Assembly (NCBI GenBank): GCA_002269645.1
Contig: NIVC01001462.1
Location: forward strand, 124,001 to 188,000
Length of the DNA: 64,000 bases
DNA from: Macrostomum lignano
Taxonomy: Eukaryota
Direction: 5' to 3'
Made by a program: the position numbers and the translations under genes. The notes under the pieces were generated by a model. It was given only the letters and a program-made list of their open reading frames with translations. It ran no database searches and was not told the DNA's origin. Each line of letters opens with the position of its first letter. Within the stretch, counting starts at the first letter, position 1. Of the stretch, positions 4,246-57,450 are shown piece by piece.

Positions 4246-4284
4246 TTTTTTAACAAAGATATTCTTAACTTTCCTCTCGCTCAG

Positions 4285-11654: not shown

Positions 11655-11739
11655 CTGTATAAAACAAATAGTAGTGAAATAATGGTCCAGTTGCAGTTTA
11701 GAGAAACGGCGTTTTAGAATTGTCGCTGCAAAGATTTGA

Positions 11740-16772: not shown

Positions 16773-17345
16773 ATGAAGCGCATACCATTGAAAAAGAACG
16801 ACGACAACACTGCTCCAGAATACTTCAAAGTGCGGGACAGAGTAAGAAGATACACCCGAGACGAGCACAATGTTAGACTACAAATATTAAGAATTGAGAA
16901 GATTGAAAACCAGGTACTTGATAGACGCTTGCACGATGTTTCTAAGCGAATGCACCTCAGAAACTGTAAACCGGAGCTGCTCATTCACGGTACTCAAACC
17001 AGATACGTCGAACAAATGATCAGAGACGGTTTCAGCTATCAAAGAAAAGGCCTGTTTGGTCAGGGCTTCTACTTCTACACCGACAGCAGCAAAGCTGCTC
17101 GAGGCTGCGGTAGAGACACTACAAAGTGCCTCCTACTGTGTGATGTGCAGTTGGGCAACACCATGGCGATGAAATCTGCTGACAGGAGCCTCAATTTGAG
17201 CAGAATCAAGTCAGCCGGATTCGACTCGGTTTACGGCGTTCGGGGTACCAAGGAATCCGGGGGCGTCTTCAACGACGAGTACGTTGTGTTCCGGTCCGAA
17301 CAGATTGCACCAAGGTACCTCGTCTGGTTTACAAGTAAGCTGTGA
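16773..17345 (+). CDS. Tankyrase-like ADP-ribosyltransferase copy B (190 aa from this ATG; possible acceptor at 16754 would add upstream exons)
   Basis: Intact ORF: RIEKIENQVLDRR, LLIHGT, GLFGQGFYF, LLLCDVQLG, FNDEYVVF...APRYLV. AATAAA at about 17467. Confidence 0.9.
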   Translation: MKRIPLKKNDDNTAPEYFKVRDRVRRYTRDEHNVRLQILRIEKIENQVLDRRLHDVSKRMHLRNCKPELLIHGTQTRYVEQMIRDGFSYQRKGLFGQGFYFYTDSSKAARGCGRDTTKCLLLCDVQLGNTMAMKSADRSLNLSRIKSAGFDSVYGVRGTKESGGVFNDEYVVFRSEQIAPRYLVWFTSKL

Positions 17346-21735: not shown

Positions 21736-24670
21736 TCAGGTGCGATAAAAAATTCTAGTTTTCTTGGCCAAGCGTTTGCTTCGCCTGGGTGACGGCTTGG
21801 ATTGAACTCCGGCCTCAGTCTGTTGCTGTTGTGCTCTCTCAGCTTGTTCTGTTCCTGGTAGTATCTCAGTGTCTGTCGATGACGGACGCGTCTGTTGGCC
21901 GTCGTCACTTGGACCGTTGCCACCGGGCTTGGAATCCCCCATTTCCATAGTTCCGTAAGCCTCAGGTACCTCACCGATTCGTAGTTGATCGAGGTGGGTC
22001 TTTAGATTTCGTCCAGTCTCTGGGGTGACGACTGCTGTGTTGCTGCCAAGCATTTTGGCGAATCTCACAGTTCGTGGCTCATGAGAACTCGATGCACGGT
22101 AGATGAGTGATTCTCCTGGGATCCACTTGGACTGAGTGCTGCTCTCCGAGATGGGGAGTCTTATTTGTCTGCCGTTCAACAACTCGGACGGTGATGCTTG
22201 CTGCTTCCCTTTGGCAGCTCTGTAGAACAGTAGAAATCTGTCAATGCTTCTTTGGGATCAACCATTGGTCTTGATTGTCTCTTTGACGGTTCGCACCATT
22301 CGCTCTGCAATGCCGTTGCTCTGTGGATGGTAGGCGGGCGTTGTGATGTGCGAACAGCCAATCTGGGTGAGCCAGCCGGTCACCGCTTCGCTCACAAAAC
22401 TAGGGCCGTTGTCTGACACGAGACACTTGGGCACCCCCCTGTTGTGAGAACAATCTTCTAAATCTGGAAATGACTGTGTTGGCCTTCATGTCGCTCGTGA
22501 TGAAGACTTCCGGGTAGCTCGAGTGCGCATCCACAATGATGAGTAGGTACTTGCCCTCTATCGGACCGGCAAAATCAATGTGCACTCGCTCCCAGGGGTT
22601 GTCAGGTTCTGGCCACGAGTGCCGAAAGTTCTTATTTCTGGACTTGTACGCGTTGCACACGTTGCATCGTCCAATGTAGTCAGCAATGTCACGGTCCATC
22701 TGTGGCCACCAAAACTGTTCCCTCAAAATCGACTTTGACTTTTCCACCCCAAGGTGCGTTGAGTGTACAGCTGCCAGGGCAGTTTCTCTCAGGACACGAG
22801 GCAATACAATTCTGTTCATTCTGTAAATAATTCCATCATTGACAGTTAGCTCATCTTGAACCTTTGAGTAGCTGAGTAGGTGTGGCTCGTCAAATAGATT
22901 ATTGTTAATTATGGCTGCGCCCAGGCATCTGAACTCCGGGTCCTCTCTGGTTGCGTGTGCAATGCGATCCAGCTGAATTACTCCCGGGTTGTCAGCTTCG
23001 AGGAGTCCGATCGATGCTGTCTGTGCATTCGGCTTAGCGGGCACCAGTCGAGATAGCGCATCCGACAGCATTAGCTTTGATGGTCGATACTGTATGTCAC
23101 AGTCATAAGCAGCTAGTATGATTGCCCATCGTTGTAGTCGAGCTGAAACTCTGGTGGGCAGCTGTTTGTCTGGCGCGAATATGTATGTGAGGGGCCGGTG
23201 ATCAGTTATCAGTGTGAACCTCCGGCCATACAAGAACCGATGGCATCTTTGAATGCACCAAACCAGTGCCAGGCCTTCACGCTCTATTTGCGAATATTTT
23301 GTTTCGGCGTCAGACAGAGTCTTGCTCATGTACACCACGACTTGACCGCTTTGTGTCAACACTCCGCCCAGAGCTCGCTGAGAACTGTCGCATTCCAGTT
23401 CAATGGGCTTCTCCGGATCAAATATTTGAAGACTCGATTGATCAGAGAGAGTGACCTTGATTTCGTCAAATGCTATTTGACACTCCTTTGTCCACACGAA
23501 GTCCTCATTTTTCTTTCTTAGTCGATTGAGAGGCTTGGTCAGTGCAGCTAGGTTTCTGATGAACTTGCCGCTAAAATTTACGAGACCCAGGAAGGATTCA
23601 AGCTCGCCAACGTTCTGCGGTGGTGTCATGTCCTGGATTGCCTTCACTTTGGCTGGGTCCGGCTTGAGCTGATCTCCTTCCAATAAGTAGCCTAGAAACT
23701 TGATCGAAGTCTTGCGGAATTCACTTTTCACCGTGTTGATCTTCAATCCTTGCTGGTTTACTCGATGCAATACTTCCGTCTCACGAACTGCCAATTGTTT
23801 TACTCCTTTGCCGCATATCAATATGTCGTCTACGTAGGCAATGACGCCAGGAATTCCTTGTAGGACTTGGCTAATGTACCGCTGGAAGATCGCAGGTGCT
23901 GTTTTCACTCCGAACGGAAGCTTGTTGAAAGCGAACACCCAAATGGTGTTGACATTTACTGTCAGCTCTTTGGAAGCTTCATCTAGTGGGATCTGGTGAT
24001 AAGCTTTCTCTAGGTCCAGACGAGTGTATATCCGGCTGCCAGCAGCAGTTGCAATCACTTCGTCAGGTGCAGGCATCGGATATGAATCGTTGATAAGATG
24101 AGAATTGATTGTCACCTTGTAGTCGACGCAAAGTCTGAGCTTTCCAGAAGGTTTCTTGACCACGACAATTGGTGAGGCCCATTCACTGAACTTGACGGGC
24201 TTGATGGTGTCTTCTTCAAGCAACCGATCAATTTCATCCTTGACTCCCTGTCTGAGTGCGAAGGGTGGCGGCCTGGGTTTGCAATGAATTGGAGTGGTTC
24301 CTTCCTTGATCTTAAGAGTTACTGGTGGAAATTCGCATGACTGGGTTGCCGATGTGCAGCTGTTGTCTACAGCGTTTAGCGTGAAATTGAGCTTGTCTCG
24401 GCCAACCAGAACAAAGTTCCTCTGCGATTCCACAATGAAGAATGTGATTGGAATGAACTCGTCATTGTACTCCAACTCAGTGTCGTGTGTTCCAAAGACC
24501 TTCATCTGCGTATCAGCGTATGTTGTCAGAACAGTGTCTGTAGGTGTCAGCTTTGGACAACCGAATCGTTTCCAGATCGTTTTTGACATTACCGAAACTC
24601 CTTCCCCAGTATCGATTTGTGCGTTCACGCTAAGCATCGACCCACTCGTGTGTCTGAGCCTAACAGGCAC
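21736..24670 (-). pseudogene. pol: Gypsy pol (protease DTG, RT YVDD, RNase H, HHCC, integrase DFAG/SDNG/AER), frameshifted in the integrase
   Basis: 756-aa ORF 22400-24670 plus a frameshifted continuation. Confidence 0.9.
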
Positions 24671-24678
24671 GGTGTAGC

Positions 24679-25498
24679 TGTGACGTTGCTAGTTTAAGTG
24701 GTCCCGCAAAAGGGCCGTTGGACTATAGTTTCCCTCGCAATTTCTCATATTAATTTCTCCAATAGTTTATTTTAACGTTTACTTGTAGTAGCGTGCAAAT
24801 AATCTGTATCAACTGCTAATTCACTGTGTATTTGGTAGGCCTTGCGCTCGCCTGTGAATTTTGGCACGATCGATAATTTCAAGTCCTCTCGCCAGCCAAT
24901 GAAAAATCTTCGCGTGTATTTTGCTAGCCCTCTGCGCTCTTTATTAACCCCCGCCTGGCGGCGGGCTCCTCACTTCTCCGGCCTTCTGTTTGCCTCCCCT
25001 CTCCTCTAGCTTCGGGCGTCTGGCTCTCGTTTTCCTTCTCTCTCTCTTGGCTGCCTCGAGCCTCCTTATCTCTCGCCACGGCTCCCCTGTCTGGGCCAGC
25101 CTGTTTACACTGCCTGCCACTGTCTGCCACGGCTAACGCCAATCTCACCACTACGCATCTGCCTCTTCTGTGCTCATCGCCGTTACTCACCACGTTGCAT
25201 CGCCTTGCATCACTCGCCTGCCACTCGACTGCAATTTCTAACTCACCTTCAATTCAAAACCATTGTTGCAGCCGCCAGTGTCCCAAAGCGCAATAAGTTC
25301 TGTATTGACATTAACCAATTTGAATATTGATCTCAACAATAAATCAACTACGGCAGTTCCCTGCCTTGTACGCCAAGTGCTCCGCTACACAATCCGCTTC
25401 TCAAGACTTGACTCGATTCATTTTGGGACTACGACTTACGACAACTCTCGTAAAACGGCCCTTCTAAGGGTCATAGCCTCTACGCCAATAACGTGACA
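24679..25498. mobile_element. 820-bp solo LTR of another family, inserted at the Gypsy gag/pol junction
   Basis: TGTGACGTT...AACGTGACA termini and 5-bp TSD GTAGC. Removal restores EDSY|TVPVRL. Confidence 0.85.
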
Positions 25499-27408: not shown

Positions 27409-27446
27409 GGCCTGACGAAGAGCCCAGAGGCTCGAAACCAGTAGCC
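27409..27446 (+). ncRNA. Minimal type I hammerhead ribozyme motif at the PLE 3' end
   Basis: GGC-CUGACGA-A-GAGC(CCAGAG)GCUC-GAAAC-CA-GUA-GCC: conserved core, stem II, short stem III, GUA triplet and stem I GGC/GCC. Confidence 0.65.
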
Positions 27447-27527
27447 TATTTTCAAAAAGAATTTTAACACGCTGTGACCTCTCTTCTCTCTCTTCTCTCT
27501 CTCTACCTCTCTCCCTATGTCTGTCAG

Positions 27528-28683
<1,156 letters not shown>

Positions 28684-29239
28684 CTCTTTGACTCGTCAAA
28701 GGGGCTTCGAGTTCAAAATCTGTGAGAGGAGAAATGCTATTAAAATATAAGCTTTATACTCTAATCAGCAGAGCTGAAGCTGAAAAACTGATCAAATTTA
28801 CAAAAACTGTGTAATCACTAAGCAACTACTCCTCAATATAAAAAAATTGCACACTAGCATTGTTAGTTTTGCTGTACAGTCGCGGTATCTGGAGAAATGC
28901 ATCGTGCGCGTGAGTGTACTTGTATCTCGTCGGGCGGCGTGAGATGGTTAACTTTTTAATTGTTCTTTTTTAGACGCGTATTTTACGAGTAAAACAGCTT
29001 TTTTCTTGAGGTATGACACCCTCGCTGATAAAGCAGCTCTTTTTGCGTGATAAAGAAGCTCGTATCAACTTTGTTTGCAGCGACATTTGAACATTAGCAA
29101 ACCAAGAATGGGACTCTTTCATAGCAAGCGGCATTTGGTGGTAAAAACCAACTTTTAACTGCTTTCTTTTCTTTGAAGTTCTCTTCTGTAATTCTGATAT
29201 TATCAATTTATCATTTTTTTCTGTGTCTACTCACTTCAG

Positions 29240-29998
29240 CCGAGGTCACGTTACGTTCCGGACGCCTACTTTCCTCAGCCGCGTTTTCACGCTCCGGACG
29301 CCTACTTTCCTCAGCCGCGTTTTCACGCTCCGGACGCCTACTTTCCTCAGCCGCGTTTTCACGCTCCGGACGCCTACTTTCCTCAGCCGTGTTTTCAGCA
29401 CCCAAGACGTGCCAGATCAACGACACGAGTCAGGCGCGTCCCTATCACAGCGGAAAACAATAGAACTATCGCTGAGTACCACCGCATTTGCGACAGAGTT
29501 CTTCGCTACACCAGACCTGAGCACGAAATTGTCATCAAGATCTGCAGCATCGAGCGCATCAAAAATCGTGTGCTGGACAGGAGGATGCGGAAATGTCGCC
29601 GCGAGCTTTTCCACCCCAACTGTTCAACGGAGCGGCTATTCCATGGAACGACGCGGAGCAATGCTGAGAATATCATTACCGATGGCTTCAAAATAGGCGA
29701 CGGTGGAATGTTCGGCGACGGGATCTACTTCGCCACGGACAGCACCAAGAGCGTCCAGTACTGCACAAACACCAGCGTCAAGTCGTTGCTGCTGTGCGAT
29801 GTGCTTCTTGGAAAGCAGAAAGTGTGTCGAACTGCTCGAAAATATCTCGATTTTGAAACGCTATCAGAGGAAGGCTATGATTCGGTGTTCGCCCAAAGAG
29901 CATCCAGGAAGACGAGAGGCGTGCTCTACGACGAGTTTGTGGTGTACGACCCGAGACAGGCGGCCCCAAGGTACCTCATCAAGTTCAGGACAGCTTGA
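29240..29998 (+). CDS. Tankyrase-like ADP-ribosyltransferase copy C, terminal exon (N-terminal 12-aa repeats plus ART domain)
   Basis: Strong acceptor TTTTTTTTCTGTGTCTACTCACTTCAG|CCG opens a stop-free frame: (PDAYFPQPRFHA)x~4, VRRVP...EY..I.DRV.RY..PEH, IERIKNRVLDRR, LFHGT, GMFGDGIYFATDSTKSVQY, LYDEFVVY...APRYLIKF*. The start exon was not found. Confidence 0.85.
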   Translation, partial: PRSRYVPDAYFPQPRFHAPDAYFPQPRFHAPDAYFPQPRFHAPDAYFPQPCFQHPRRARSTTRVRRVPITAENNRTIAEYHRICDRVLRYTRPEHEIVIKICSIERIKNRVLDRRMRKCRRELFHPNCSTERLFHGTTRSNAENIITDGFKIGDGGMFGDGIYFATDSTKSVQYCTNTSVKSLLLCDVLLGKQKVCRTARKYLDFETLSEEGYDSVFAQRASRKTRGVLYDEFVVYDPRQAAPRYLIKFRTA

Positions 29999-36962: not shown

Positions 36963-38174
36963 TAAGATAAAACGTTAAATAACGCGCCCTCTGGCTTTAT
37001 GCCAATGAAAACATTAATCCCGCATATGGACTTTGTCCGCCGCGACCTTAACAACATCCACATGGACCTGGGCAATGTGGATAGTCGACCTCCCGCCCTC
37101 AACATCAGGAGGGGCTTCAAGACCGCCATCCCTGGCCGAGACAACATTCCGCTGGATGTCGGTGTGAACCGGCGCAGCCAGGGCATTCACTGCTTCACCG
37201 ACGGCTCGCTGTTCAACGGCCGCGCTGGAGCGGGTATTGCCATTTTCCACGAGGGTAAGATGCTTCTCCAGGAAAGTCTGCACCTCGGTGAGAACACCTC
37301 AGTTTTCCAAGCTGAAATTTGCGCCATTGAGCAGTGTGCCCAGCAACTGTTTCAGGCGAACATTAATAATTTTGACATTAATTTCTACACTGATAGCCAA
37401 GCTGCTATTAAGGCCTTAACCACTGAGAATATCTCCGCTGCTACAGTATCTCAATGCCACCGCAGTGTGCAATCTCTCTCAGTCCTTAACAGGATTAGAA
37501 TTATCTGGACACCTGGTCACAGCAACATCCTGGGCAACGAGCTCGCGGACTCTCTCGCCAAGGAGGGCAGCAACCCAGACGGCAACCACCGTCTGATGAG
37601 GCTACCCACCCCCAGGTCGCAAGTCACCCGCCATATCAACAGGTGGCTCCATCAGCAGCACCAGCTCCACTGGAACAGCTGCACCGAGTACAGGCAGAGC
37701 CGCTCTGCCATGCCTAACCTGAACAGGAAAGTCTCTGATTATCTGATTTCGCTTAACAGAACCGACCTCAGGGAGATGTGCATGGTCCTAACCGGCCACG
37801 GATTCTTCCAGAGACATATATCGTTGCAAACCGGTTGCCCTCCCACCTGTCCCTTCTGTGGCATAGGAGAGGAGACCGCGGAGCATCACGTCACCTTCTG
37901 CCCTTACTTCAACAAGGCGCGGCACAAATACCTCGGCCACCCCCAGCGGATGGACGAGCTGACCACCGCGGACAATATCCGAGACCTCCGCGCCTTCGTC
38001 CGGGACTCCGGCCGGATGAGGGTCGCCGATGCCTCCACTGCGGACCTGCCGACTACTGGCGGGGACTGGGCGCACCCCCAAGGCTAATCCTTGTGCTCTT
38101 TTACCTTGGGGTTGCGATAGGGGCCTCGCGGCCTATTCGCGGCGCCTGCGCCCCCCGTCAGTAGTAGTAGTAAG
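36963..38174 (+). mobile_element. 5'-truncated non-LTR retrotransposon (RNase H-bearing R1/Loa/I-group); intact RNase H + CCHC ORF 36999-38087; (GTA)n tail
   Basis: FTDGS, SVFQAE, TDSQAA and [19 protein letters not shown] (RNase H); LTGHG and CPFCG..EETAEH...CP (C-terminal knuckle). The tail GTAGTAGTAGTAAG precedes the downstream repeat. Confidence 0.9.
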
Positions 38175-45540: not shown

Positions 45541-47426
45541 GATGTTTTGTTTTTAGAGGGAATGTCTGTTGTTTTTTATGAAGGCTTTATTTCGCTGTCT
45601 ATTTGTTATTAGCAAAGAACAAGGATTCTATCCAGATGTCCCCCATCGGGGGGGGGGGGGCGAAGATTGCTATTCATCATCATCATCACAATATACTAAA
45701 TCTCTAAGATCTGACCGGTATTTCAGTCTACAGCTGAATGCCTGAACCGATTTTCTTCAAACTTGCTTTATTCAATTGCAAATTCTTGTGAGATTGTGTG
45801 GGTGTAATTGCATTGAAAAATTCGAATGAGAAGATGATTAAATATTCAAAAAACGAGTTTTTCCTATGCTTTTAATGGGAGGCTAGAAAAGGTAAAAATC
45901 TCACTAACTGAATTTCAATTCCAATTAAGATTGCGCTACAACTTTTCTCTGTTCACTGTGTACGCCTCAAGACTGGCTGCAATAAGGGAGAGGAAAATAA
46001 TGCTCAGTGGCTGCGTGTGTACATTCTGACCCTGGCTGACTGGCGGACTGCATAGACAATTGCTATTAATAGATTTTACTCAACTGTGCATTGGCCCTGC
46101 CTGCATACAACCTGTGCACACTGAGCAGCCTATCACTGCTATGTATTTGACTGCAGTGCCGAAGCATATATGGCTGATTTTTGCGCCCTCCGATCAGTAG
46201 GCGGAATAGCCGCAGTGTAGGCACTAGGACTAGGTTTAGGCTAGGCAATAAGGTCCATAGTTTGAGTCCACCTCCCAGCGGCTAAGTAAAATTAAATTCA
46301 TTCATTAGTAGCTTCTGCCTCGACTATTTAGAACAGTTTTTGATTAATTGTAATTAAATTTTTTTATTAATTACAATAATTTATTTTTGCTACTCGCACA
46401 AGCCACTAAGCAAATTTGATTTGATTTGTAAAATCCTAAGATCCCATTAATTGTTATTATTTAGGTCTATAGAAGTAGATATTACTAAACTGCAGGGGAT
46501 TAAATTACTAAAGTGCAGATGATGCTGCTAAACTGCTGAGGTATTGCGAAATGCTGAGTGGTGCAAAAAATTGCCGATATGTATCGAAAATCGATTAGTG
46601 AGCCATAAAATGCTGAGCTAATTTCTACATTGTTGAAAGGATCATTGCAGTAGACGATGCTGCTAAACTGCTGAGGTTTTGCTAAATGCTGAGTTGCGCA
46701 AGACTGCCAATATGTATCGAAAATTGATTAGTGCGCCGTAGTAAATGCTGAGCAAATTTTTAAATCATTGAAAAGATCATTGCAGTTTGCTGAGAATACT
46801 GAGGGGCCAGCTGAGAGAACTGCAGACTGCTGAGGGGATAAATGAGAATTATTAAGGAAACACTTGCTGACTGCAAATGAATTGACTGCAGACTACTGAG
46901 GGGAACTGCAGATTGTTGAAGGGATCATTGCAGACTGCAAAGGGGACAAACTGCAAACTGCTGACGTTGGTTAGTTTCTCGAGACTTATGAGCGTATAAG
47001 CTGCAAACTGCTGAGGGGATAGCTGCAGACTGCTAGGATAATAATGGCAGACTTCTGAGGAGGATATCTAACTGTGAATAGTTTTAGCTTGCTGTGGGGA
47101 CAATTCTGGGTCCTTGAGGGATAAATGAATAATAATAATAAAAGTTGTAGAGTGCAAATGAGTTGCATGACTGCATGTCTGTTTTGCGGAATTAGAAGGG
47201 ATAATTTCAGATTGTTTTGGGGATAACTGCCAATTTTTGGGGAGGGTTTAACTTTAAACTTCTGAGGTGACAATAGTAGTCACCTTTTAGCAGTTTGGGA
47301 GTGGTGCTAATCTGGGGAGCGGTGCTAATCTAAGGGAGTGGGGCTAATATAAAGGAGTGGGGGGGCTAATCTGGAGGAAGTTTCATTGTTTCCTTCACTT
47401 TTCAATCTATGTAACTTAGCTTTGTC

Positions 47427-50392
47427 ATGGACTGGGCATGCCATCGATGTGGTAAACAGTTCAGCACTAAATTCAATCTCAAGAAACATCAGCAGACAAA
47501 CAGGTGTTCGGTTTTAAAGCAAGCGACTTCCTTTGGCTCCTGAAAGTCATTCGCAGATGTGAGAGATGCGCTACAGCGTTCTCCAACCAAGATTAAAAAG
47601 TTTTTTTAACCCGAATCTTTTTCCTGAACTTTTGGCTGACAAGCGCTTTGAGGAAGTCGTCGGAATGTCTCGAGAGAACTTCGACAGCTTCAAAAGCCTC
47701 ATCTCTGGCTTAGTACGCACTAGATTTCTAAGTCAAGAGAACTGAGTATTTCTTTACCTGAAAAAACTCCGCCATGGCGTCAGCTTTGAAGCCATAGGAA
47801 ACGATTTCAACATTTCTGCGCGCCGCGCTTGTGAAGTCTTTTGGGAGGTGGCCAAGGATCACTACATCAACGAACCTTTTCAACCAAGGCTACTGTCATG
47901 TTCTCCGATTGAGACGATCCTGGAGACGAACGTTGTTGGGGACGAATTTTTTTCAGGTTCGTTCAGGTTCGTTTCGTTCGTTTACGAACGTTCGATACGT
48001 TCGGGATAAGCAGCTTGTTTTGTTTATCGGTGACCATACATACTTTCTCATCGGTAAAGGCGGCCAGCACCATCTGCAGAAACGCACATACTATGCTCCA
48101 AAGAGTAGCAACGTTTTAAAGAAACTGATCGTAGTGTATGCGACTGGCAAGGTAGTTTACGCAGCACCGCTCAGCGGATCCATATATCCTCCCCTCAGTG
48201 ATGGAAATCTGGCGGCCTACTAGATAGAGATGGAGCGAGAGCATCTCATTCCAGCTGCACTAACAAAACTACTCTGTGCCAATGTGCCAGGGTATCGAGT
48301 CGTGGCGATATTTGACCGCGGTTACAGTTCACCACGCTGCACTGATTCATCGGGCAAGAGTTTCCGCGATCTGATTGAATCAAACAGTCGAGGAAACACG
48401 CTGCTATTGTTTCCTCTCGGACCCGGCGATCCAATAATTAATGATCGATTTTGCTACGTAAAGAATCCAGTGTCGGCTGAGGATCGCCCCGTTCACGGAA
48501 AACTGACTGGTATTGAGTCAAATACCAGTAGGCTGGCCACGCTTTTCCGCTTTTCTGTTAAGAGCGCGTTCGCCGCAATCAAGCAGAACAGGTGTATTAA
48601 TGAGCGGCATGAGCCATACCAGTGGCAGCAGCCAGCTGAATTAAGTACATCTAGTCGGCTGGATGTCATTATCGACAACTGTATTGCCAAATACAACCGC
48701 TCGCACATTGGATTCCCACTGAATAAAACGCTGCCAAAGTCATGGAATGACAGCTCACTTTTTGAGTTTGGTCAGAATTTTACCAGGCGCATGTTTCTCA
48801 ACAACGAATTCGATCTGATTGAAGGTGTGAACTACCTGTGTGACGCGACCCGAACTCCTATCGAAGGGTCGAGGCGCTGGTCACCAGTCGATGTGCTAGA
48901 TCCTGAGTCCACAGGCTTTCCTTGAATTGAGATAGAAAACCTTCAGGGAGTAAGTGTGGGACCATTTCATGTACAGCAGTCTGAAAGCTATATCCAAAAC
49001 ATCCAGATGCAACACACGCTTGAGAATTTCGACGGTGATACGTGGTTAGAGCTTGAAGACCTTGCATCGCAGCTGCCTCAATCGATGCGCTGCTGGAAAT
49101 TCCGGCAAGAACAGCAGCCAAGGAACTGGCAAAAGAAATTCGGCAACTGGCAACCGTCGTGGATATTTATGTCCGTTGTGTTTTCGAGGCACACATCTCG
49201 AACATATCGAGTCCTTCTTCGCCTCAGCGATTTACCGAATGAAAACCCTTTTGGATTCCACGATGCCGGTCTAAGGAGGCTACATGCCTACTACTCCTCG
49301 TCCAAAGTGGGTAGCCGTACAGCTGGCTGTGACTGCCATGTAATGACAGTTCTTTTGGTCCTAGGTCATTATGCCTACGACCCAGATTCCTTTCGCCAAC
49401 GATATCCTGAGCGCCGCTTCGTTGATACACAGCTTCCTAAAAGCCTCAACGCTAATCTTTACACCTCTCTACCTGCTGAGGAAAATGTTAGAACAGAGCC
49501 TCGTCAAGAGCATCGTTCAGGAGCAAAGGCTGTCAAACAAACATCATCAAGAAGTTCAGAGCCGCAGCCTCTCTGTGGACTAAGAAATAGCGGAGCAGAC
49601 TGCTATGCCAATTCTGCCATTCAGCTTCTTTACTGGATGGAGCAGAAGGGCCCCATTAATAAGACGGGACATAGCTAGTGCCTTGCAAAGATCTCTACAG
49701 CTACTTTTTCATCAAATGCTAGCTCTAAAAAATACTTCTGCCCCAGAAGTACAAGGAATTATCAGGCGCATCTTGCCCGGCAGATTTGCTGCTGGTGAGC
49801 AACACTGCTTTCTGGAGTTCTTGGAAGCCCTGCTTTCGACTCTCTCTCGGTTGCTAATGGCGCCCTGGCAGATGTTACTACGCTCCGTAATTGTCAACGT
49901 TATGGCTACAGCGCAGCCTCGATTCAAACAGGAACAATCAGTGAACAAATTCTTTGCGTTCCTCTCTCAGAGTACAGCAGGGCTCCAATTAGCCTTTACG
50001 ATCTTTTGGAAGAGTGACTGCGACCACGCATTTCGCAGTGCGGCCAATTAGGATGCGAAGGCTTGATTGAAGAGCAGATTATTCTATCAGCGGCCAAGTT
50101 TGCAATTATTTACTTCAGCAGGATTCCAGAAAACTATAACGCCGAAAAAATCAACACCCAAATACGGTACTCACCAAGATCACCAAGATCTGAGAGTAAT
50201 TCCGACTGCGGCAGTCCTGTGATAGTGATATGCCACTATGGCAGATCTCTCCATCGCGGGCACTATACTACCAGTGTTTGGCATAACAATGTATGGTGGT
50301 TGATTGACGATTCCAGAATTGAGCCCAACTGCAATCCGATTCTCCGGGATGCACAAAATATCGTTGCTGTAGTTGTGCAAAAGAAAGACTGA
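47427..50392 (+). pseudogene. Decayed DDE transposase (PIF/Harbinger-ISL2EU, DDE_Tnp_4-like) with N-terminal zinc finger and HTH, fused to SWIM and USP/C19 deubiquitinase domains
   Basis: MDWACHRCGKQFSTKFNLKKHQQTNRC (zinc finger); LYLKKLRHGVSFEAIGNDFNIS (HTH); GDHTY, SDGN, IFDRGY and R.SVKSAFAAIK (DDE); KVGSRTAGCDCHV (SWIM); GLRNSGADCYANSAIQLL, EQHCFLEFL, CHYG...GHY and W..IDD (USP boxes). Several in-frame stops and about 4 frameshifts. Confidence 0.8.
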
Positions 50393-50899
50393 TCGTGCTT
50401 TCACCAGATCGTAGACCCGAGCTAGACAAGTTTTAGTTTTCCTTGCGATGCACTCCAACATTCGAAAGACTTATACCTACCTATGAACTTTTGCTTGCTC
50501 TGTTACATGTACTTTTGCTTGTTAATATTTGCTCATGTACTTCTGCTTGATAATATTTGCTCATGCACTTTTGGTTCCCATTATTTGCAAATGCACTGTA
50601 TCATACAGTACTAAAATCGTGCATTTTAATATTTCATTAAACCTGTTCAAAAAAGTCTAATACAGATACTTAATAAGATATTTTAACTTTAAATGCAATT
50701 ACAGAAATCATTAAAACATTAATCAACATAAAGACTCAAGGCAGCTTTACCGGCCTGCTTCATCGGTCAGATTCTCATTGTCGGTCCAGTAGAGAGATCC
50801 GATAGAGAAACCGGCTCAATCGGCCACCGCTTCCATTTCAGAGCCTTAAGTTCACATGAAATCCCCATTTTCCCCATTTATCCCATGCGGAAGCGGCCG

Positions 50900-52053
50900 G
50901 GGTGGAAGAAAGATCAATTACGCTTTTCTTGTCTATTTTGGGTCTGAATAGTGAGAATTTCGCAGCGGTTTGGTTGCTGGACTCACGGCTTCCAAATCGC
51001 GCTCAAGTTCATATCCTCTTTCAATAAGTCATTAGAAATGAAACGTGCAGTTTTCAAAGTGGCAGTTCTCGAAAAAGCGAAACACCCGTTTCGGATCTAT
51101 TCGATCTGCAATAAAGATGTTCGATGCGTAAAAACGTCTTTTATCATTTTTCGAACATTGTAGTCTTAAAACCAACTTACCACTCTTCACACGCGTTTCC
51201 TGCGTCATTTGATCCCGAGTAGTCTTCGGTAGCGATTGAATTTCAACGGCATCCAGATCCATTGCATCTTCGTCGATAGGAAGCTCAGGCAGTTCTCGAG
51301 ACTCAGCCGCAAGATCATTTATGCGAAGTTCCAAGCCCCACTTGGTTCAAGTCCGTATATTTTCTTATAGTCTATGGTCAAATCAACTCTTTCCATTTCC
51401 CTTCAGTTAGGCTGAAATAATGACCGCCCCCGCTAGCCTGAAATAATGACAGCGCGAATTCCAATAGGCTGAAATAATGGTAGATTGCCTAGGTATGTAA
51501 CTGAGTTGAATAATGGCCGAATAATTACGCTCGCGTTCTTGCCATTATTCAGCGAAGGTACATACTAGGTAAGCCCATTGTATATACACTTATGACCGGC
51601 ACTGATGTCATTTTTCCACACTTTTTGCTGTCATTATTCCACACTTTTTAATCACGCTTCAATTGGCTGTTTTAAGAGTTATTTTACCCATAGACAACCC
51701 TGATGTGTGTCTTAGTTTGACCATAGACAACACTCTGATGAGTGCTGAATTTGACTGCGTCTTGCAAGAAGTCAGGAAAGCGAGTAAGTACAAGTAAAAG
51801 CTATTGTCTTGTCAAACAACTATGGCTGGTGCATCTCGTGAAACAGCCGCGCTTATCAACTAAAAAAATCTTCTTGTCGACAACTGAACGAACCGTGCGG
51901 CGCTACCTAGGAAGAAAACGCAATTATGCAGTCTTCAACGCCTCGACGGCTATAAGCGATGCCTCAAAGCGGCCAATCGATTCAGTCGAGCAGCCGAGAG
52001 TCTCAAAGAATCCCAGCTTGGATACTGCGGTACCAAAGAAGCTACGCTCGTAA
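50900..52053. mobile_element. Crypton-derived remnant: divergent short ORFs around a hairpin
   Basis: Minus ORF 51032-51334 has LPKTT and ends FENCHFENCTFHF, like the Crypton/DUF3504 C-terminus. Hairpin at ~51488-51570, three GCTGAAATAATG copies, and a plus-strand remnant with TERTVRRY. Confidence 0.55.
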
Positions 52054-53020: not shown

Positions 53021-56000
53021 CATCGCGGCCAGATCATCAGTCCGCGGATGACCTCGGTTGGCTCGGACGGCCGCACTTCGGCTGTGGCAGCAAAGCTCAG
53101 CACAGCAGGGACTCGCAGAGGTCAACGCAGCGCGCAACGCCGCACTGAGCGGCAGTGCGAGCGCAACCGGCGAGGGCGACTCCGTGGCGCGGCCAGGCGC
53201 CCGTTGTCCCCAGTCCCTGCTACTTCAACTATGGATCCGCCGGGTGGCGCCGGGGACCACGAGGCCAACCTCCATCTGGCCCCAGCTGTACCAGGTGGCC
53301 GCCTCAGGCTCGGCACGATGAACTGCCGAACTCTGAAGGCCCCCTGGCGTCGCACCATCCTTGTCCAGCTGGCCCACGACCTACGGCTGAACCTCGTCTC
53401 GCTGCAGGAGGTCTCTATCGTGGATGAGCCGGGGCTTCACTCTGAGGACCTCGGAGCCGGCTGAAGCCTCCTGTACACGTCGGCAGACAACCGCGGCCGG
53501 GGCGGGGTCAGCGTGCTGATCGGACCGCGCCTCCAGCAGAGCGTGCACTGCATCTCGCTGTCCCCGCGACTGATGCGGGTCGACCTGCGACTGCGTGCCC
53601 GCTGCATCCGGCTGTTCTGCGCGTATGCACCCACCGCTGCTCACCCCGAGGAGGCTCGTGCCTTCTTCGACTTCCTGGCTGAGCAGCTAGAAGAGGTGCC
53701 AAATCGCGACACGCTGGCAGTGCTCGGAGACCTGAACGCAGTCCCGCGGAGGTCCGAGCGCTCGCCCTTTGTCGCGGAACGCGAGAACGCCAACACTGAT
53801 GCGCTGGAGAACCTGCTTGACCGGCTGGATCTGGTGTCCGCGAACACCCAGTTCCGCAAGCCCCCTGCCCGTCTGGTCACCTTTGCGGGCTGCAAGAGAA
53901 GGCGGCGGAACGCACGCGGGCGGAATGCCACGAGGAGACTGGCGCAACTAGACCATGCGCTGGTTCGCACTCGCGAGCGCCGCCGCGTCACCAACTGCGA
54001 CACCATGGCTCCACTGGCTCTCCGGTCAGACCACCGACTCCTGATCTGCGACTTGCGGCTCCGCGACCAGCTCTACCGACCGCCAAAGCAGCGGCCACGG
54101 CGCTACTATCGCGCACTGTTGGACACCCGCGTGAAGCGTCAATTCGCGGATGCCTTCGTCGGCGCGCTTAGAGACCAGCGCAAGGCGGAGTATTTCGACA
54201 TCAGCACCGCCGTTAGAGCCGCTGCAGAGCTGACGGTCCCGCTGATGCGGCCAGTGCAGAAATCTCTGTCTGTCTGGCAGAGTGACCCCATCATTAGGCA
54301 GGCGCGGCTCAACATCGAGCGACTCCGCAGGAACCGGAGGCCCACAGACGACGCTGAAGACGCATTTGAGCGCCTTCTTGACGAGCGGCAGCAGGCCGCT
54401 GTCGACGACGCCATTAGGTCCATCACTGCAACCGGCCCCGACGTGAAGAGCCGCGCAGTGTGGACGGCCGTCCGGACTCTGACGGGTGCAAAAAGCGCGT
54501 GGCGCTGAACCTGGCCGGCGACACCCCGGAGGAGCGCAGGAATGAATTGCGCGACTTCTTCGCCGGCATCGTGAACGCGCCCGCGTCGCCGCTGCCCGCC
54601 AGCTTTGCGCTCCCACTGGACACGCCTCTCCCAGCTGAGGAGGACTTCTGCACCAGACCAGTCACCACGGAGGACGTTGTGCTGTACGCTCGGAAAACAT
54701 CAGGCGGCAAGGCGCTCGGCCCCGACGAAGTCCCGGTCGAAGCGCTTCGGCTCCGCTGTGTGGCCTCCCAGGTCACAGGCGTCATGAACCGCGTGCTCGC
54801 CGGCGCTCCTGCGCCTACCGAGTAGACCGTCGCGCACATCGTGCCGATCCCGAAGAAGGCAGGGACAACGCGGAAGGAAGACCACCGCGGGATCTCGCTG
54901 ATGTCCTGCACCGCAAAGCTCTTCAACCGGCTGCTGCTCGATCGTCTGCAGTCGGTGCTGGACCCGTACCTGCGGTACGAGCAGAACGGATTCCGGCCGC
55001 AACGCGGTACAGTGAAACAGATCCTCGCACTCCGCCGTGTCATTGAGGAGGCGCGAATCCGCTAGTCTACGCTGATCATTGTCTTCGTTGACTTTCGAGA
55101 GGCGTTTGACTCGGTGTTGAGAGCCGCGCTTCCCTTTGTCCTTCGAGCCTACCGAGTACCCCAGCAGCTAATCGACGCTGTCATGGCGCTGTATTGCGAT
55201 ACTCGAGCTGCTGTGGTGACGGCGGACGGCCTGTCTGACCTGTTCGATACTTCATCAGGAGTTCTGCAGGGCGACACGCTAGCGCCGTTCCTCTTCGTAC
55301 TGCTGCTGGACTGGGTGCTTCGGACCGCACTCCCCTCGGCTAATGACGGCTTCCTGCTGCGCAGGCGCATCGGTCACCGCCACGGCGAAATGCGCCTAAG
55401 CGTGCTTGGCTACGCCGACGACCTCGCCCTCCTGTCCTCGTCCGTTAAAGGCGCCCAGCGCCAGATCGACAGGCTGGTCGAGGTGGCATCGAGCGTCGGT
55501 CTGATCGTCAACACGCTCAAGACTGTGCTGACTGTGCCGGCCGACATCCCAGCGGACCTGACATGTCGCGGCGCAGACGGGCAGACCACCAGGCTCGCAC
55601 GCTGCCAGCGGTTCACCTAACTCGGCGGTCTGGTGCCCCACGTGGAAGAGGACCTCCGGCGGCGCAGAGGACTTGCCTGGGCGGCCTTTCGTTCGATCCG
55701 AGCCGTCCTCCAGTCCGAAGCGCTGCCCGACCGCCAGAGGGCTCGGCTGTGGCAGGCGGTGGTCGAAACCGTCCTGCCATACAACGCCGAGACATGACGC
55801 TGACGGCTATGCTAGAGCGGCAGCTGGACTCGGCGCACTGAGGGCTGCTCCGTGCGGCCTTTCAAGCTGACGAGAGCGTCGGGACCGAGGCCCTGTACGA
55901 TCGGGCCAAGCTGCAGCGCCCGTCCATCATTCTGCGCCGGCGACGACCTCAACTGGCGGGTCACGTGATCCGGGCCGAGGGCTACTGCCCCCAACCTGTT

Positions 56001-56213
56001 CAGGACGTCCTGCTGCTCACCTTGCAGGGTCCGTTCAGGCGGGGTCAGGCCCGAACCCGTCGATACGTGGACTGCCTGCTGTGCGACGCTGGGGCGCCCG
56101 ACACTACCAACGGAGCGGACTTTGTTCGCTCCCAGGCTCTGCGGCGCTATCTGACGCGCCCTGCTCTAACTGTGACTGTGCATGCGGGGTCGCGTATTTT
56201 GTTGTTGTTGTTG
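53020..56213 (+). mobile_element. Near full-length RTE-like LINE (AP endonuclease + RT), inactivated; (TTG)n tail
   Basis: LGTMNCRTL, SLQEV, LGDLN, LDH and SDH (endonuclease); IVPIPKK, RGISL, EQNGFR, GVLQGDTLAPFLF and YADD (RT). Multiple stops and frameshifts. Confidence 0.9.
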
Positions 56214-57450
56214 TTGCATCAGTGCTGCTCCCAATCCGTCCTTGCCGGCGTCAACTGACAGAATAATTATCTTATTAGGGTCGTATTGCGTGAGAACTGG
56301 CGCTTCACACAGAGATTTTTCTTGATATTCTGATATGCGTCTTCCTGATTTTCGCTCCAGGACCACCCAGAATCCTCTTTCATGAGTGCTCGTAGAGGAC
56401 TTGTGAGTGTAGAAAAATTCGGAATAAATCGAAATAAGTTTTACTGGGGTTATAGGGGCGCATGCCACTCAAATAATCTCCGTTGTCTGTCTGACGATAT
56501 TTTCATTTTGCTTAATCGCTCGACTTTATTTAACCGTGTGAACTTAATTATCATAAAGCTATTAAATAAGTTTGCGCTTTCGATAAATCTTTGTAGTTGA
56601 GCATATTCTTTTCGTTTACTTCGTCGAAGCTTTTTGGATGTGGAATTTCTTTCACGCTTTGAACTTTCTCTGGATCGATTTTCACCCTTTTTTTCGTCAG
56701 TATGTGTCCCAAAAGGCGTAACTCGGTCTTGCCAATAGCTATCTTCTGTCTGTTTAGGGTCAGCTTCTTCTTTCTGCATTGTTCTGACAGGCTATTTACA
56801 GCGAAGTCGTGCTCCTCTCGAGTCTTTCCCCAGACGATGATGTCATCGATGTAGTTGGAAGAATGGACAACTTGACTGGTTACTTCCTCTCGAATCCGTC
56901 TCTGATAAGCTTCTGGCGCATCTTTCAGACCGAATGCTAGTCTGTTCCACTTGTAGTCACTGTCACTGGATTTCTCTCCAGTCATCTGATGAGCTTGAAT
57001 CTTGGAAGCTTCAGAAGCACGGAATAACATAATAGCTTTATCTAAAGTAAGCTTTTCCTCTTCTAGTAGGCGCTCTAGCAGTGCCGAATTGTGCACGCCG
57101 AACACGATTTGATCGCGCAGAATAGCATCATCGATGCCAGCTGTGAATTTTTCGGCACTGAGTAGCTCCATCGCTTAATGAGCAGTCATATATCGCTCAA
57201 AAATATAAAAATCTTCGAATTGTTCCTGCTAGCGCATTTGGAACTTATAGCGATCGCGTGTTTCGTGTTTCGCTGATCGCGTGGCATGCAGAAAGCTTCA
57301 AATCTGACGGCAACGTCCTTGAATTGGGCATCCTTCGCAGAGCTGAATGTTTCGAATATGTCTCGACCTTCCTCACAAGACTCCTTACTCATTTCTGGCT
57401 GAAGTGTTGCTTCCCGACTGCCTGATAAATGACATTGGATTGAGACAAGT
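56214..57450 (-). pseudogene. Internally deleted Gypsy gag/RT/RNase H remnant
   Basis: LRDQIVFGV, LTLDKAI, RLAFGLKDAPEAYQR, YIDDIIVWG and EAPVLTQYD...VDAGKDGLGAALMQ. Confidence 0.8.

What the first reader, a model, noticed from the sequence alone, without database searches (positions are those of the whole stretch)
47427..50392. DNA transposase fused to a complete USP-family deubiquitinase (ZnF-HTH-DDE-SWIM-USP)
Seen: short ORFs in three frames join into one ~990-codon frame. It carries a C2HC zinc finger (47427), an HTH, DDE_Tnp_4-type motifs (D at 48032, D at 48314, and K at 48560 where the catalytic E is expected) and a SWIM-like motif (~49300). A USP domain follows with all boxes in order: Cys box (catalytic C at 49601), QHC/QQD-like box (~49800), degenerate fingers zinc ribbon, His box (H at 50261) and DD (50306). 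Established: Zisupton/KDZ, some MULEs, CACTA elements and Helitrons carry Ulp1 (C48) or OTU proteases, whereas ISL2EU elements typically carry a YqaJ nuclease. I do not recall a C19/USP protease as cargo of a PIF/Harbinger-group transposase. Inference: a transposon family that encodes its own deubiquitinase, perhaps to stabilise the transposase or to remove repressive ubiquitin marks such as H2AK119ub at target or donor chromatin. This copy is dead, but the protease triad is still readable.
Basis: partly seen in the sequence, partly recalled or inferred. Interest (0 to 1): 0.85.

Follow-up and report, generated by a model that had tools for sequence, protein, structure and literature searches.

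The report
Spy-like DNA transposon carrying a deubiquitinase
The window holds a dead copy of a cut-and-paste DNA transposon whose single protein joins a Spy-type transposase to a complete USP deubiquitinase, and intact, recently mobile sister families in the same genome show the fusion is native, a combination I found described nowhere for this kind of transposon.

Summary
Window 47427-50392 is one decayed reading frame, with 5 premature stops, 4 frameshifts and the catalytic E changed to K. It reads zinc finger, HTH_Tnp_4, DDE, degenerate SWIM, disordered linker, USP. It belongs to a 5'-truncated copy (47383-51018) of a multi-copy element. The majority consensus of the copies is a single 982-codon ORF. 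Two sister families in the same genome have the same architecture as intact ORFs of 978 and 988 aa. One of them has at least 12 copies about 99.5% identical.

Empty sites show insertion exactly between AAA and TTT with no target-site duplication. That is the hallmark of Spy elements (PHIS superfamily), not of Harbinger or ISL2EU. The transposase falls in a sister clade to canonical Spy, with spacing D(93)D(80)E and an N-terminal C2H2-type finger.

The USP is supported by Pfam scores over threshold, by the predicted fold, and by a conserved Cys/His/Asp triad and zinc ribbon. These hold in at least six lineages, most of them from metagenomes. It is not a host pseudogene.

The function is inferred: probably an active deubiquitinase acting for the transposase. 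Deubiquitinases are known in Helitrons. I found no report of a USP in a DDE transposon. I class it as a new variant of a known kind.

The parts
47383..51018 (+). 5'-truncated, decayed copy of the transposon ('family 1'); the 5' TIR and about 1.1 kb of 5' subterminal sequence are missing from the window
   Evidence: BLAST of the window against 12 genomic copies and of full-length copy L011 against the whole window. Only one terminus motif is found in the window.
47427..50392 (+). Remains of the single ORF (982 codons in the family consensus). It has 5 premature stops, 4 frameshifting indels, one in-frame 9-bp insertion and 44 other amino-acid replacements.
47439..47507 (+). N-terminal C2H2-type (C-x2-C-x12-H-x5-C) zinc finger
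   Evidence: Pfam zf-C2H2 27.7 bits against a cut-off of 25.2. Conserved in clade A relatives.
47728..47841 (+). HTH_Tnp_4 helix-turn-helix of PHIS-type transposases
   Evidence: Pfam PF13613 31.5 bits against a cut-off of 27 on the window's own translation; 30.8 bits on the consensus.
48032..48562 (+). DDE catalytic core: D at 48032, D at 48314, and E mutated to K at 48560. Spacing is D(93)D(81)E.
   Evidence: Sequence, consensus, and an alignment with 56 relatives in which all three columns are D/D/E.
49280..49375 (+). Degenerate SWIM zinc-finger remnant (GCDCH at 49325-49339). The first two Cys of the CxC...CCxH motif are lost.
   Evidence: Alignment with relatives that keep an intact CxCxxGxRxxGCCxH
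49376..49573 (+). Low-complexity linker between transposase and USP
   Evidence: The corresponding residues 652-713 of the intact sister protein have pLDDT below 50. USP-less relatives end here.
49574..50392 (+). USP (peptidase C19, Pfam UCH) domain: Cys box with C at 49601, QHC box around 49800, degenerate zinc ribbon, His box with H at 50261, DD at 50306
   Evidence: Pfam, PDB profile search, and fold of the intact sister protein
50393..50772 (+). 3' untranslated / subterminal region of the element
   Evidence: Colinear with the other copies
50773..51018 (+). 3' terminal inverted repeat. It contains one copy of the 161-bp subterminal unit (other copies have arrays) and ends ...GCTCAAGTTCATATCCTC.
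51019..51021 (+). Host TTT half of the AAA|TTT target site

Best explanation
Window 47383-51018 is a dead, 5'-truncated copy of a cut-and-paste DNA transposon of the PHIS superfamily. The element inserts the way Spy elements do: exactly between AAA and TTT, without a target-site duplication.

The element has long TIRs built from 161-bp tandem units and a single intron-less ORF of about 980 codons. The protein is a C2H2-type zinc finger, an HTH_Tnp_4 domain, a DDE core with spacing D(93)D(80)E, a SWIM-derived domain, a roughly 60-residue disordered linker and a C-terminal USP-family (C19) deubiquitinase domain. These points are shown.

The fusion is native to the element. It is old and kept by selection. 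It recurs in three families of this genome, one of them young enough to be presumed active. It also recurs in at least four further lineages recovered from metagenomes, always with the catalytic Cys, His and Asp and mostly with the zinc-ribbon cysteines.

The following is inferred. The USP is a working deubiquitinase delivered in cis with the transposase. It most likely strips ubiquitin from the transposase or its partners, which would protect them from proteasomal degradation. Alternatively it acts on ubiquitinated chromatin or repair factors at donor and target sites. This would parallel the Ulp1, OTU and VTD proteases of other transposons.
For: Multi-copy family with colinear transposase and USP.

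The majority consensus is one 982-aa ORF that restores E at the DDE position.

Pfam UCH scores 47.0, 37.5 and 42.5 bits (cut-off 23.9) on the consensus and on the two intact proteins.

Intact 978-aa and 988-aa ORFs exist, and at least 12 copies have an identical USP part. Copies are 99.4-99.5% identical.

Termini are conserved between families (G[A/G]GGATGT[G/C]AACTTAAGC) and always flanked by AAA/TTT.

Empty sites at 97-99% identity carry an uninterrupted AAATTT.

PHIS membership rests on three results. HTH_Tnp_4 scores over its cut-off. DDE_Tnp_4 scores over its cut-off in the close relatives P0008 (32.4 bits) and P0010 (27.4 bits). It scores 49-79 bits in sister clade B..

Among 1.84 billion representative proteins, further transposase+USP proteins are P0012, P0024, P0035 and P0048. 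P0001 and P0009 are pieces of one further family.

The catalytic C, H and D and two zinc-ribbon Cys are among about 10 invariant columns out of 277.

The AlphaFold2 model has pLDDT 72 with a disordered linker at 652-713. Foldseek gives USP12, USP15, USP35, USP14 and USP7 at probability 1.0, with TM-score up to 0.66 normalised by target length.

The profile against PDB sequences gives USP46/USP12 at E 1.7e-15.

Precedent for transposon-borne deubiquitinases, one class shown to be active: PMC9741609 and PMC11417382. A canonical Spy-clade protein with a C-terminal Ulp1 domain (P0129) shows a parallel fusion.
Against: No enzymatic, expression or transposition data exist, so the role of the USP is inference only.

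DDE_Tnp_4 itself is below Pfam's threshold on these proteins (13.9 bits).

The DDE spacing and the N-terminal zinc finger do not fit the published Spy definition. 'Spy-like sister clade' is therefore the most that can be said.

The USP tree is unresolved. One or several acquisitions cannot be told apart.

Some relatives in the same transposase clade lack a USP (P0005-P0008, P0162). The domain is therefore not indispensable for this kind of transposase.

The family-1 consensus has G rather than D at the first position of the DD pair.
Confidence: 0.8

Rival explanations
1. The USP domain is not a working deubiquitinase for ubiquitin removal. It would be either a ubiquitin-binding or targeting module that brings the transposase to ubiquitinated chromatin, or a cis-protease that cuts the transposase free of the fusion.
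For: Papain-like and USP-like proteases of viruses often process polyproteins (discussed in PMC9741609). The linker is long and disordered. P0002 has an SGG in its linker.
Against: The full triad and oxyanion-type boxes are conserved in all lineages, which a pure binding module would not need. The GG in the linker is not conserved in the 988-aa family or in the family-1 consensus.
Confidence: 0.15
2. The USP part of the window copy is a host USP gene fragment or processed pseudogene that landed next to, or was captured by, one transposon copy, so the fusion is accidental.
For: The host genome has many UCH-domain loci. Transposons do capture host fragments.
Against: The USP lies inside the TIRs in all full-length copies of three families that share only 45-56% protein identity. 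It is in one uninterrupted ORF with the transposase. It is also fused to related transposases in unrelated metagenome samples. There is no poly-A tail and no target duplication of its own. No host locus resembles it closely: every hit above about 50% identity that I could cross-check is a copy of these element families. The best solved USPs reach only E 1e-15.
Confidence: 0.01
3. The ~980-codon frame joins two separate genes of the element, a transposase and a USP, like the two-ORF Harbinger and ISL2EU elements.
For: PHIS elements commonly have two ORFs (PMC4482050). One metagenome relative has a separate upstream zinc-finger ORF.
Against: In the intact families the frame runs without any stop from the ATG through the USP, in at least 12 copies. 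No other ORF of 100 aa or more lies between the TIRs.
Confidence: 0.03
4. These are domesticated host genes derived from a transposase rather than mobile elements.
For: Transposase-derived host genes with added domains exist. The intact ORFs are conserved.
Against: The loci have TIRs, internally deleted derivatives, dozens of copies, near-identical copies at unrelated loci, and precise empty sites.
Confidence: 0.01

Closest known systems
Spy transposons (PHIS superfamily; Han et al. 2014, PMC4122938; cgSpy, PMC11304231)
   Same: Insertion exactly between AAA and TTT without target-site duplication. TIRs of very variable length that start with G-rich GGA-type termini. A single long ORF. HTH plus DDE_Tnp_4-type core of about 700 aa. 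A SWIM-type CxC...CCxH motif shared with the clade that shows the published Spy DDE spacing.
   Different: The transposase falls in a sister clade with D(92-96)D(74-102)E instead of D(79-80)D(44-62)E. It has an N-terminal C2H2-type zinc finger. Its TIRs are made of 161-bp tandem units; the Spy paper reports no subrepeats. It has about 280 extra C-terminal residues forming a USP domain. Hyvu-Spy-1 of Hydra is listed with a 963-aa ORF and may be of the same kind, but I could not check this.
ISL2EU and PIF/Harbinger elements (PMC4482050)
   Same: Same superfamily: HTH_Tnp_4 and a DDE_Tnp_4-type catalytic core, with TIRs often starting with GG.
   Different: ISL2EU makes a 2-bp AT duplication at A|AT|T and has a THAP domain and a second ORF with a YqaJ nuclease. 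Harbinger makes a TWA duplication and has a Myb/SANT second ORF. None of these features is present here. No UCH, ubiquitin or peptidase entry occurs in the domain tables of 380 PHIS families.
Helitron-like elements carrying OTU, VTD or UCH domains (PMC9741609, PMC11417382)
   Same: A mobile element that encodes its own deubiquitinase, often in frame with the transposition protein. The Pfam UCH domain is reported as stable cargo of HLE2 elements. VTD domains were shown to cleave ubiquitin chains.
   Different: Those are rolling-circle RepHel elements, not DDE cut-and-paste transposons. The protease classes with tested activity (VTD) are unrelated to USP in sequence.
Ulp1 (C48) proteases of MULEs (Kaonashi/KI-MULE), CACTA and Zisupton/KDZ elements
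   Same: A ubiquitin-like-modifier protease fused to, or encoded beside, a DDE transposase. A Spy-clade relative found here (P0129) carries exactly such a C-terminal Ulp1 domain.
   Different: A different protease clan (CE against CA/C19) and a different presumed substrate (SUMO against ubiquitin).

Membership tests
PHIS superfamily (PIF/Harbinger-ISL2EU-Spy) | DDE_Tnp_4-type catalytic core with a conserved D, D, E triad | tested here: met
   The triad columns are D/D/E in 54 of 57 aligned relatives; two of the rest are N-terminally truncated and one has G at the second position. Pfam DDE_Tnp_4 is below its cut-off on these proteins themselves (13.9 bits). It is over the cut-off in the close relatives P0008 (32.4) and P0010 (27.4), and scores 49-79 bits in sister clade B. 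Membership therefore rests on transitive homology.
PHIS superfamily (PIF/Harbinger-ISL2EU-Spy) | HTH_Tnp_4 DNA-binding domain upstream of the DDE core | tested here: met
   31.5 bits on the window's own translation and 30.8 bits on the consensus, against a cut-off of 27.
Spy group | Insertion between AAA and TTT with no target-site duplication | tested here: met
   Filled and empty sites were compared for 7 insertions. L030, L024, L031 and L021 show an uninterrupted AAATTT at the empty site. All 27 inspected termini are flanked by AAA or a decayed form of it.
Spy group | Single long ORF encoding the transposase | tested here: met
   Only one ORF of 100 aa or more lies between the TIRs of the intact element.
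Spy group | D(79-80)D(44-62)E spacing | tested here: not met
   D(93)D(80-81)E in the three families here and D(92-96)D(74-102)E in nearly all full-length members of their clade (P0075 has 86 and P0048 has 201 for the first spacing). The sister clade has D(77-88)D(44-53)E apart from one outlier.
Spy group | Terminal 5'-GGANNNNG-3' TIR motif | tested here: inconclusive
   Termini read GAGGATGTGAAC and GGGGATGTCAAC. They contain a GGA core, but it is offset by two bases from the published motif.
Spy group | Placement inside the Spy clade in a transposase tree | tested here: inconclusive
   The proteins form a well-supported sister clade (100/100) to the clade that has the Spy spacing. No named Spy reference sequences were available to anchor the tree.
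ISL2EU | 2-bp AT duplication at A|AT|T, a THAP domain, and a second ORF with a YqaJ nuclease | tested here: not met
   There is no duplication. The finger is zf-C2H2, not THAP. There is a single ORF.
PIF/Harbinger sensu stricto | 3-bp TWA duplication and a second ORF with a Myb/SANT domain | tested here: not met
USP / peptidase C19 (Pfam UCH, PF00443) | Match to the family model over its curated threshold across the whole domain | tested here: met
   47.0 bits (consensus, model positions 1-236 of 254), 37.5 and 42.5 bits (intact proteins), 27.8 bits (window piece), against a cut-off of 23.9.
USP / peptidase C19 (Pfam UCH, PF00443) | Cys box with the catalytic Cys, His box with the catalytic His, and a downstream Asp/Asn | tested here: met
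   C723, H938 and D953 of P0002. In the window these are C at 49601, H at 50261 and DD at 50306. They are conserved in all USP-bearing lineages.
USP / peptidase C19 (Pfam UCH, PF00443) | USP fold (palm, thumb, fingers) | tested here: met
   Foldseek of the AF2 model finds USP12, USP15, USP35, USP14, USP1, USP8 and USP7 at probability 1.0, with TM-score 0.55-0.66 by target length. The model is only of medium confidence (pLDDT 72).
USP / peptidase C19 (Pfam UCH, PF00443) | Isopeptidase activity on ubiquitin | not testable with these tools
   Needs a biochemical assay.
SWIM zinc finger | CxCxnCxH metal-binding signature | tested here: not met
   The three families here keep only GC(D)(C/S)H; the first two Cys are replaced. 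The homologous position in relatives is an intact CxCxxGxRxxGCCxH. It is a degenerate remnant, homologous to SWIM but probably not binding zinc in the same way.

The most novel reading that the evidence does not exclude
A widespread and so far undescribed sister clade of Spy transposons has repeatedly or anciently fused a USP-class deubiquitinase to its DDE transposase. The enzyme is active and needed for efficient transposition, for example by self-deubiquitination that protects the transposase from the proteasome or by editing ubiquitin marks at the break. One family, with at least 12 near-identical intact copies, is still mobile in this genome. It would offer a natural system to study how ubiquitin signalling restrains DNA transposition, and a TSD-free transposase with a built-in stabiliser.
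Probability: 0.35. Interest if true: 0.8.

Novelty: new variant of a known kind. Interest (0 to 1): 0.62.

Why it matters
Transposons that bring their own ubiquitin or SUMO protease keep turning up: Ulp1 in MULEs, CACTA and Zisupton elements, and OTU, VTD and UCH domains in Helitrons. What these enzymes do for the element is still unknown.

Here the protease is a classical USP welded to a DDE transposase of the Spy type. Spy is the only eukaryotic cut-and-paste group that leaves no target duplication, and it is already being developed as a gene-transfer tool. The genome supplies intact, apparently young copies with defined ends.

That makes the question testable with a simple pair of assays: deubiquitinase activity, and transposition with and without the catalytic cysteine.

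The result also shows that the Spy-type insertion mechanism extends to a second, deeper clade with different DDE spacing. It further shows that related transposases independently carry Ulp1. Together these point to convergent pressure to counter ubiquitin-like modification.

Tried and rejected
1. A word-indexed search of 5.8 billion proteins with the consensus found only one metagenome fragment, P0001. The exhaustive HMMER search was needed.

2. Single-sequence phmmer of the intact protein against PDB found nothing. The profile of seven USP domains was needed.

3. My first majority consensus was corrupted by internally deleted copies. I redid it treating long gaps as missing data. A 16-bp duplication artefact remained and was removed for codon mapping.

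4. A search for TIRs and an AAA|TTT signature in the metagenome contigs L044 and L045 was inconclusive, because the contigs are too short or the ends unclear.

5. The USP-domain tree meant to test one against several acquisitions, and relation to free-standing USPs, is unresolved. Branches are long and only 3 of 17 inner branches are well supported.

6. No source name or accession was attached to any of the 20 relatives looked up. All come from metagenome or read-archive assemblies. The host organisms therefore remain unknown, and I did not identify the species of the window's genome.

Coordinates nevertheless show that C380 has its USP directly downstream of the transposase part, so it is not a USP-less copy.

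8. dN/dS between families was not attempted, because synonymous sites are saturated at 39-56% protein identity.

Full report
WHAT IS IN THE WINDOW. Pieces in three frames follow one another without gaps. They read, in order:
- a C-x2-C-x12-H-x5-C finger,
- an HTH,
- LFIGDHTYF, with D at 48032,
- AIFDRGY, with D at 48314,
- RFSVKSAFAAIKQ, with K at 48560,
- GCDCH, at 49325-49339,
- CGLRNSGADCYANSAIQ, with C at 49601,
- an EQHC box,
- GHYTTSVWHNNVWWLIDD, with H at 50261 and DD at 50306.

Pfam on the window's own pieces gives zf-C2H2 at 27.7 bits, HTH_Tnp_4 at 31.5 bits and UCH at 27.8 bits. Each is above its curated cut-off.

IT IS A REPEAT FAMILY, AND THE FUSION BELONGS TO THE FAMILY. The window lies in a 764-Mb eukaryotic assembly. 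The USP part alone has about 10 full matches at 92-95% identity and many partial ones. The transposase part has 47 matches. In 12 fetched copies the two parts are colinear. Many copies carry internal deletions, as the non-autonomous derivatives of DNA transposons do. A majority consensus that treats long gaps as missing data is a single 982-codon ORF, and it restores E in RFSVECAFAAIKQ. On that consensus UCH scores 47.0 bits (E 3e-12), covering model positions 1-236 of 254. HTH_Tnp_4 scores 30.8 bits. DDE_Tnp_4 scores only 13.9 bits.

Against the consensus, the window copy is 3.1% diverged. It has five premature stops, starting at 47541, 47743, 48221, 48923 and 50015. It has frameshifts of +1 at 47600, +4 at 47989, +1 at 49651 and +2 at 49840. 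It has an in-frame 9-bp insertion at 50171, and E377K. It is also truncated. Homology to the other copies starts at 47383, and the 5' TIR with about 1.1 kb of 5' sequence is nowhere in the window. The 3' TIR is 50773-51018 and is followed by TTT.

INTACT SISTER FAMILIES. A six-frame search of the genome with the consensus protein found a second family at 45% identity that covers residues 2-977. It has open frames of 995 codons without stops in at least 12 places. A third family is at 47% identity. The ATG-to-stop ORFs are 978 aa (P0002, L024:3543-6476) and 988 aa (P0003, L027:3592-6555). Both score over threshold for UCH, at 37.5 and 42.5 bits. Family-2 copies are 99.4-99.5% identical over 5.4-7.1 kb, and their USP parts are identical in protein. 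No other ORF of 100 aa or more lies between the ends.

The ends are arrays of a 161-bp unit in inverted orientation. Unit number varies between copies, from about 2 to more than 13. Family 1 has the same unit length.

A search with the family-2 USP found no full-length copy lacking the USP. C380 had looked USP-less, but it has the USP directly downstream. That search also found many older, decayed relatives at 27-48% identity.

ENDS AND TARGET SITE. The termini are conserved between families: GAGGATGTGAACTTAAGC in family 1 and GGGGATGTCAACTTAAGC in family 2. Every terminus is flanked by AAA on the outside, or by a decayed form of it. I joined the two flanks of eight insertions and searched the genome. 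Seven had matches at 94-99% identity that span the junction.

For L030, L024, L031 and L021 the empty site reads ...AAATTT... uninterrupted. The filled site reads ...AAA[element]TTT.... For L025 my script picked up a tandem-repeat unit and was uninformative. Two old family-1 copies (L017, L020) show small indels at the junction.

So AAA and TTT are host bases, nothing is duplicated, and the insertion is at AAA|TTT. This is the defining property of Spy elements (PMC4122938). It excludes ISL2EU (AT duplication at A|AT|T) and Harbinger (TWA duplication) (PMC4482050). At least one empty site lies on the same contig as the filled one, so some of them are paralogous rather than allelic.

PLACE AMONG TRANSPOSASES. 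An exhaustive HMMER search of 1.84 billion representative proteins with P0002 gave 131 hits. I cut out the transposase core from 57 of them and built a tree. It splits, with 100/100 support, into two clades.

Clade B has 33 proteins, mostly of 480-880 aa. It has strong DDE_Tnp_4 (49-79 bits) and HTH_Tnp_4, and no THAP domain. Its spacing is D(77-88)D(44-53)E apart from one outlier, which matches the published Spy signature D(79-80)D(44-62)E.

Clade A has 24 proteins and holds the three families of this genome and every USP-bearing protein. Its spacing is D(92-96)D(74-102)E in nearly all full-length members. Several members have an N-terminal C2H2-type finger. Two members, P0008 and P0010, reach the DDE_Tnp_4 threshold.

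Both clades share a C-terminal CxCxxGxRxxGCCxH motif, which is a SWIM finger. The families here have lost the first two cysteines.

I conclude that the element is a PHIS transposon with the Spy insertion mechanism, but from a sister clade to canonical Spy. No named reference sequences were available, so equating clade B with Spy rests on the published signature and domain content only.

THE USP DOMAIN. Besides the Pfam scores, three results support it:
- A profile of seven element USP domains finds 96 solved USPs. The best are USP46 and USP12 at E 1.7e-15, followed by USP15, USP36, USP21, USP14, USP2 and USP7.
- An AlphaFold2 model of P0002 has mean pLDDT 72.3 and pTM 0.57, built from 11 sequences. 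Residues 652-713 are a disordered linker, followed by a compact C-terminal domain.
- Foldseek matches that domain to USP12, USP15, USP35, USP14, USP1, USP8, USP18 and USP7 at probability 1.0, with TM-score 0.55-0.66 by target length.

In the alignment of element USPs, pairwise identity to P0002 is 17-39%. The invariant columns include the catalytic His and Asp and two zinc-ribbon cysteines. The catalytic Cys is present in every sequence that covers the position. In P0002 the triad is C723, H938 and D953.

The resemblance to any one host USP is weak. No genomic locus outside these element families is close. This is therefore an old, diverged USP lineage, not a recent capture or a pseudogene.

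THE FUSION ELSEWHERE. Transposase+USP proteins of the same clade occur in several metagenome and read-archive assemblies:
- P0012 (1048 aa; UCH 47.2 bits; a cluster of 20 near-identical members),
- P0024 (955 aa; UCH 46.9 bits),
- P0035 (1119 aa; UCH 38.9 bits; 20 members),
- P0048 (1639 aa).

P0001 and P0009 are two pieces of one family that is 65% identical to family 1. In P0019 and P0166 the USP appears to lie on the N-terminal side of the transposase.

Other clade A members (P0005-P0008, P0162) end right after the SWIM region and instead have about 370 extra N-terminal residues. A clade B protein, P0129, carries a C-terminal Ulp1 (Peptidase_C48) domain at 39.5 bits.

The USP-bearing proteins are scattered in the transposase tree, needing 5 changes. 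Several apparently USP-less neighbours may be truncated gene models. The USP tree is unresolved. One ancient gain with losses, or several gains, cannot be told apart. None of the 20 relatives looked up carries a name or accession.

HOW IT PROBABLY WORKS. The following is shown. One polypeptide carries DNA-binding modules, a DDE nuclease/transferase of the Spy type, and, on a flexible tether, a USP with all catalytic features. Selection has kept those features in lineages that share less than 25% identity. One family has moved recently.

The following is inferred. The USP is an active deubiquitinase working for the element. The most economical role is removal of ubiquitin from the transposase itself or from partners in the transpososome, which would prevent proteasomal loss. 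That is the role proposed for the experimentally active VTD deubiquitinases of Helitrons (PMC9741609). An alternative is removal of ubiquitin marks from chromatin or repair factors at the double-strand breaks the element makes.

A non-catalytic binding role or a self-processing role is less likely. The triad is conserved, and no conserved Gly-Gly site exists in the linker.

WHAT IS KNOWN ALREADY. Two surveys of PHIS elements do not mention ubiquitin, UCH or peptidase in text or tables. One of them has domain tables for 380 families. [quoted passage not shown]

Full-text searches combining Spy, Harbinger, DDE_Tnp_4 or transposase with USP, UCH or deubiquitinase terms found nothing on DDE transposons. 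They did find two relevant precedents in rolling-circle elements. Pfam UCH is listed among 20 domains stably included in Helitron-like elements of the HLE2 group (PMC11417382). VTD and OTU deubiquitinases occur in Helitrons and Helentrons (PMC9741609).

One caution applies. Table S1 of the cgSpy paper lists a Hydra element, Hyvu-Spy-1, with a 963-aa ORF and AAA/TTT flanks. That length fits this architecture, so such elements may already sit in catalogues without the USP having been noticed. I could not check Repbase or Dfam.

VERDICT.

The window copy itself is an ordinary dead transposon. The family it reveals is a new variant of a known kind: a DDE transposase of a Spy-sister clade fused to a USP deubiquitinase, with intact young copies available for experiment. 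My confidence is high for anatomy and classification, and moderate to low for the proposed function.

Noticed in passing
G000 contigs outside the window, e.g. C2610:16884-18743, C2682:11514-13373, C490:5675-7534, C2681:35372-37231, C2395:104665-106407, C1481:266382-268124, C119:127887-128798, C1058:57756-58709: A search of the genome with Pfam UCH found full-length, intron-less UCH domains with very high scores (188-239 bits). They lie inside open frames of 620-1035 codons and are present in two to four near-identical copies each. They are unrelated in score to the Spy-type USP. They could be haplotig pairs of intron-less host genes or another USP-bearing repeat, such as Helitron-like elements.
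   Followed up: no
Protein P0129 (930 aa, metagenome), not in the window: A transposase of the clade with canonical Spy DDE spacing carries a C-terminal Ulp1 / Peptidase_C48 domain (39.5 bits). This is a parallel fusion of a ubiquitin-like-modifier protease to a Spy-type transposase.
   Followed up: partly
Proteins P0019 (634 aa) and P0166 (924 aa), metagenome: In this lineage the USP-like domain lies on the N-terminal side of the transposase instead of the C-terminal side. This hints at an independent fusion or a domain rearrangement. The Pfam score is just below threshold (22.9 bits).
   Followed up: partly
L024 (G000:C749:14100-24099) 2153-3228 and 7164-9206, and the same regions of L025-L031; window 50773-50886: The TIRs of these elements are arrays of a 161-bp unit whose copy number differs between otherwise near-identical copies, from about 2 to more than 13 units. 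The original Spy paper states that long Spy TIRs show no subrepeat structure.
   Followed up: partly
L024 insertion site (G000:C749, flanks TTACAAGAAA|TTTATTGTAA): The target of this copy is a 20-bp near-palindrome centred on AAATTT. About half of the family-1 ends have G before AAA. There may be a target preference wider than the six bases.
   Followed up: no
window 11182-11697 (-), 16725-17345 (+), 29198-29998 (+): Three single-exon ORFs have motifs that look to me like a PARP catalytic domain (LLIHGT..., GFYF..., YDEFVVY). The naming is from reading the translations only, with no family search. They may be members of an expanded gene family or part of a repeat.
   Followed up: no
window 22400-24688 (-), 36966-38087 (+), 53465-56258 (+): Other mobile-element remains are present, named from reading the translations only. 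There is a 762-aa LTR-retrotransposon pol frame (protease, RT, RNase H, integrase). There is a frame that looks like RNase H with a zinc-binding tail. There is a G+C-rich (55-64%) LINE-like endonuclease/RT frame.
   Followed up: no
window 1964-3108, 3569-4323, 6575-7302, 27416-28750, 46517-47360: Several minisatellite or tandem arrays are present, including the 20-bp CTGCAGACTGCTGAGGGGA-like repeats that abut the truncated 5' end of the transposon copy.
   Followed up: no
L044 (ENA ERZ27294121 contig, 6922 bp) 202-1944: In one metagenome relative, a separate 580-aa ORF with two C2H2 fingers lies 64 bp upstream of the transposase+USP ORF. It may be the N-terminal extension seen fused in P0005-P0007, split by a frameshift, an intron or a true second ORF.
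   Followed up: partly
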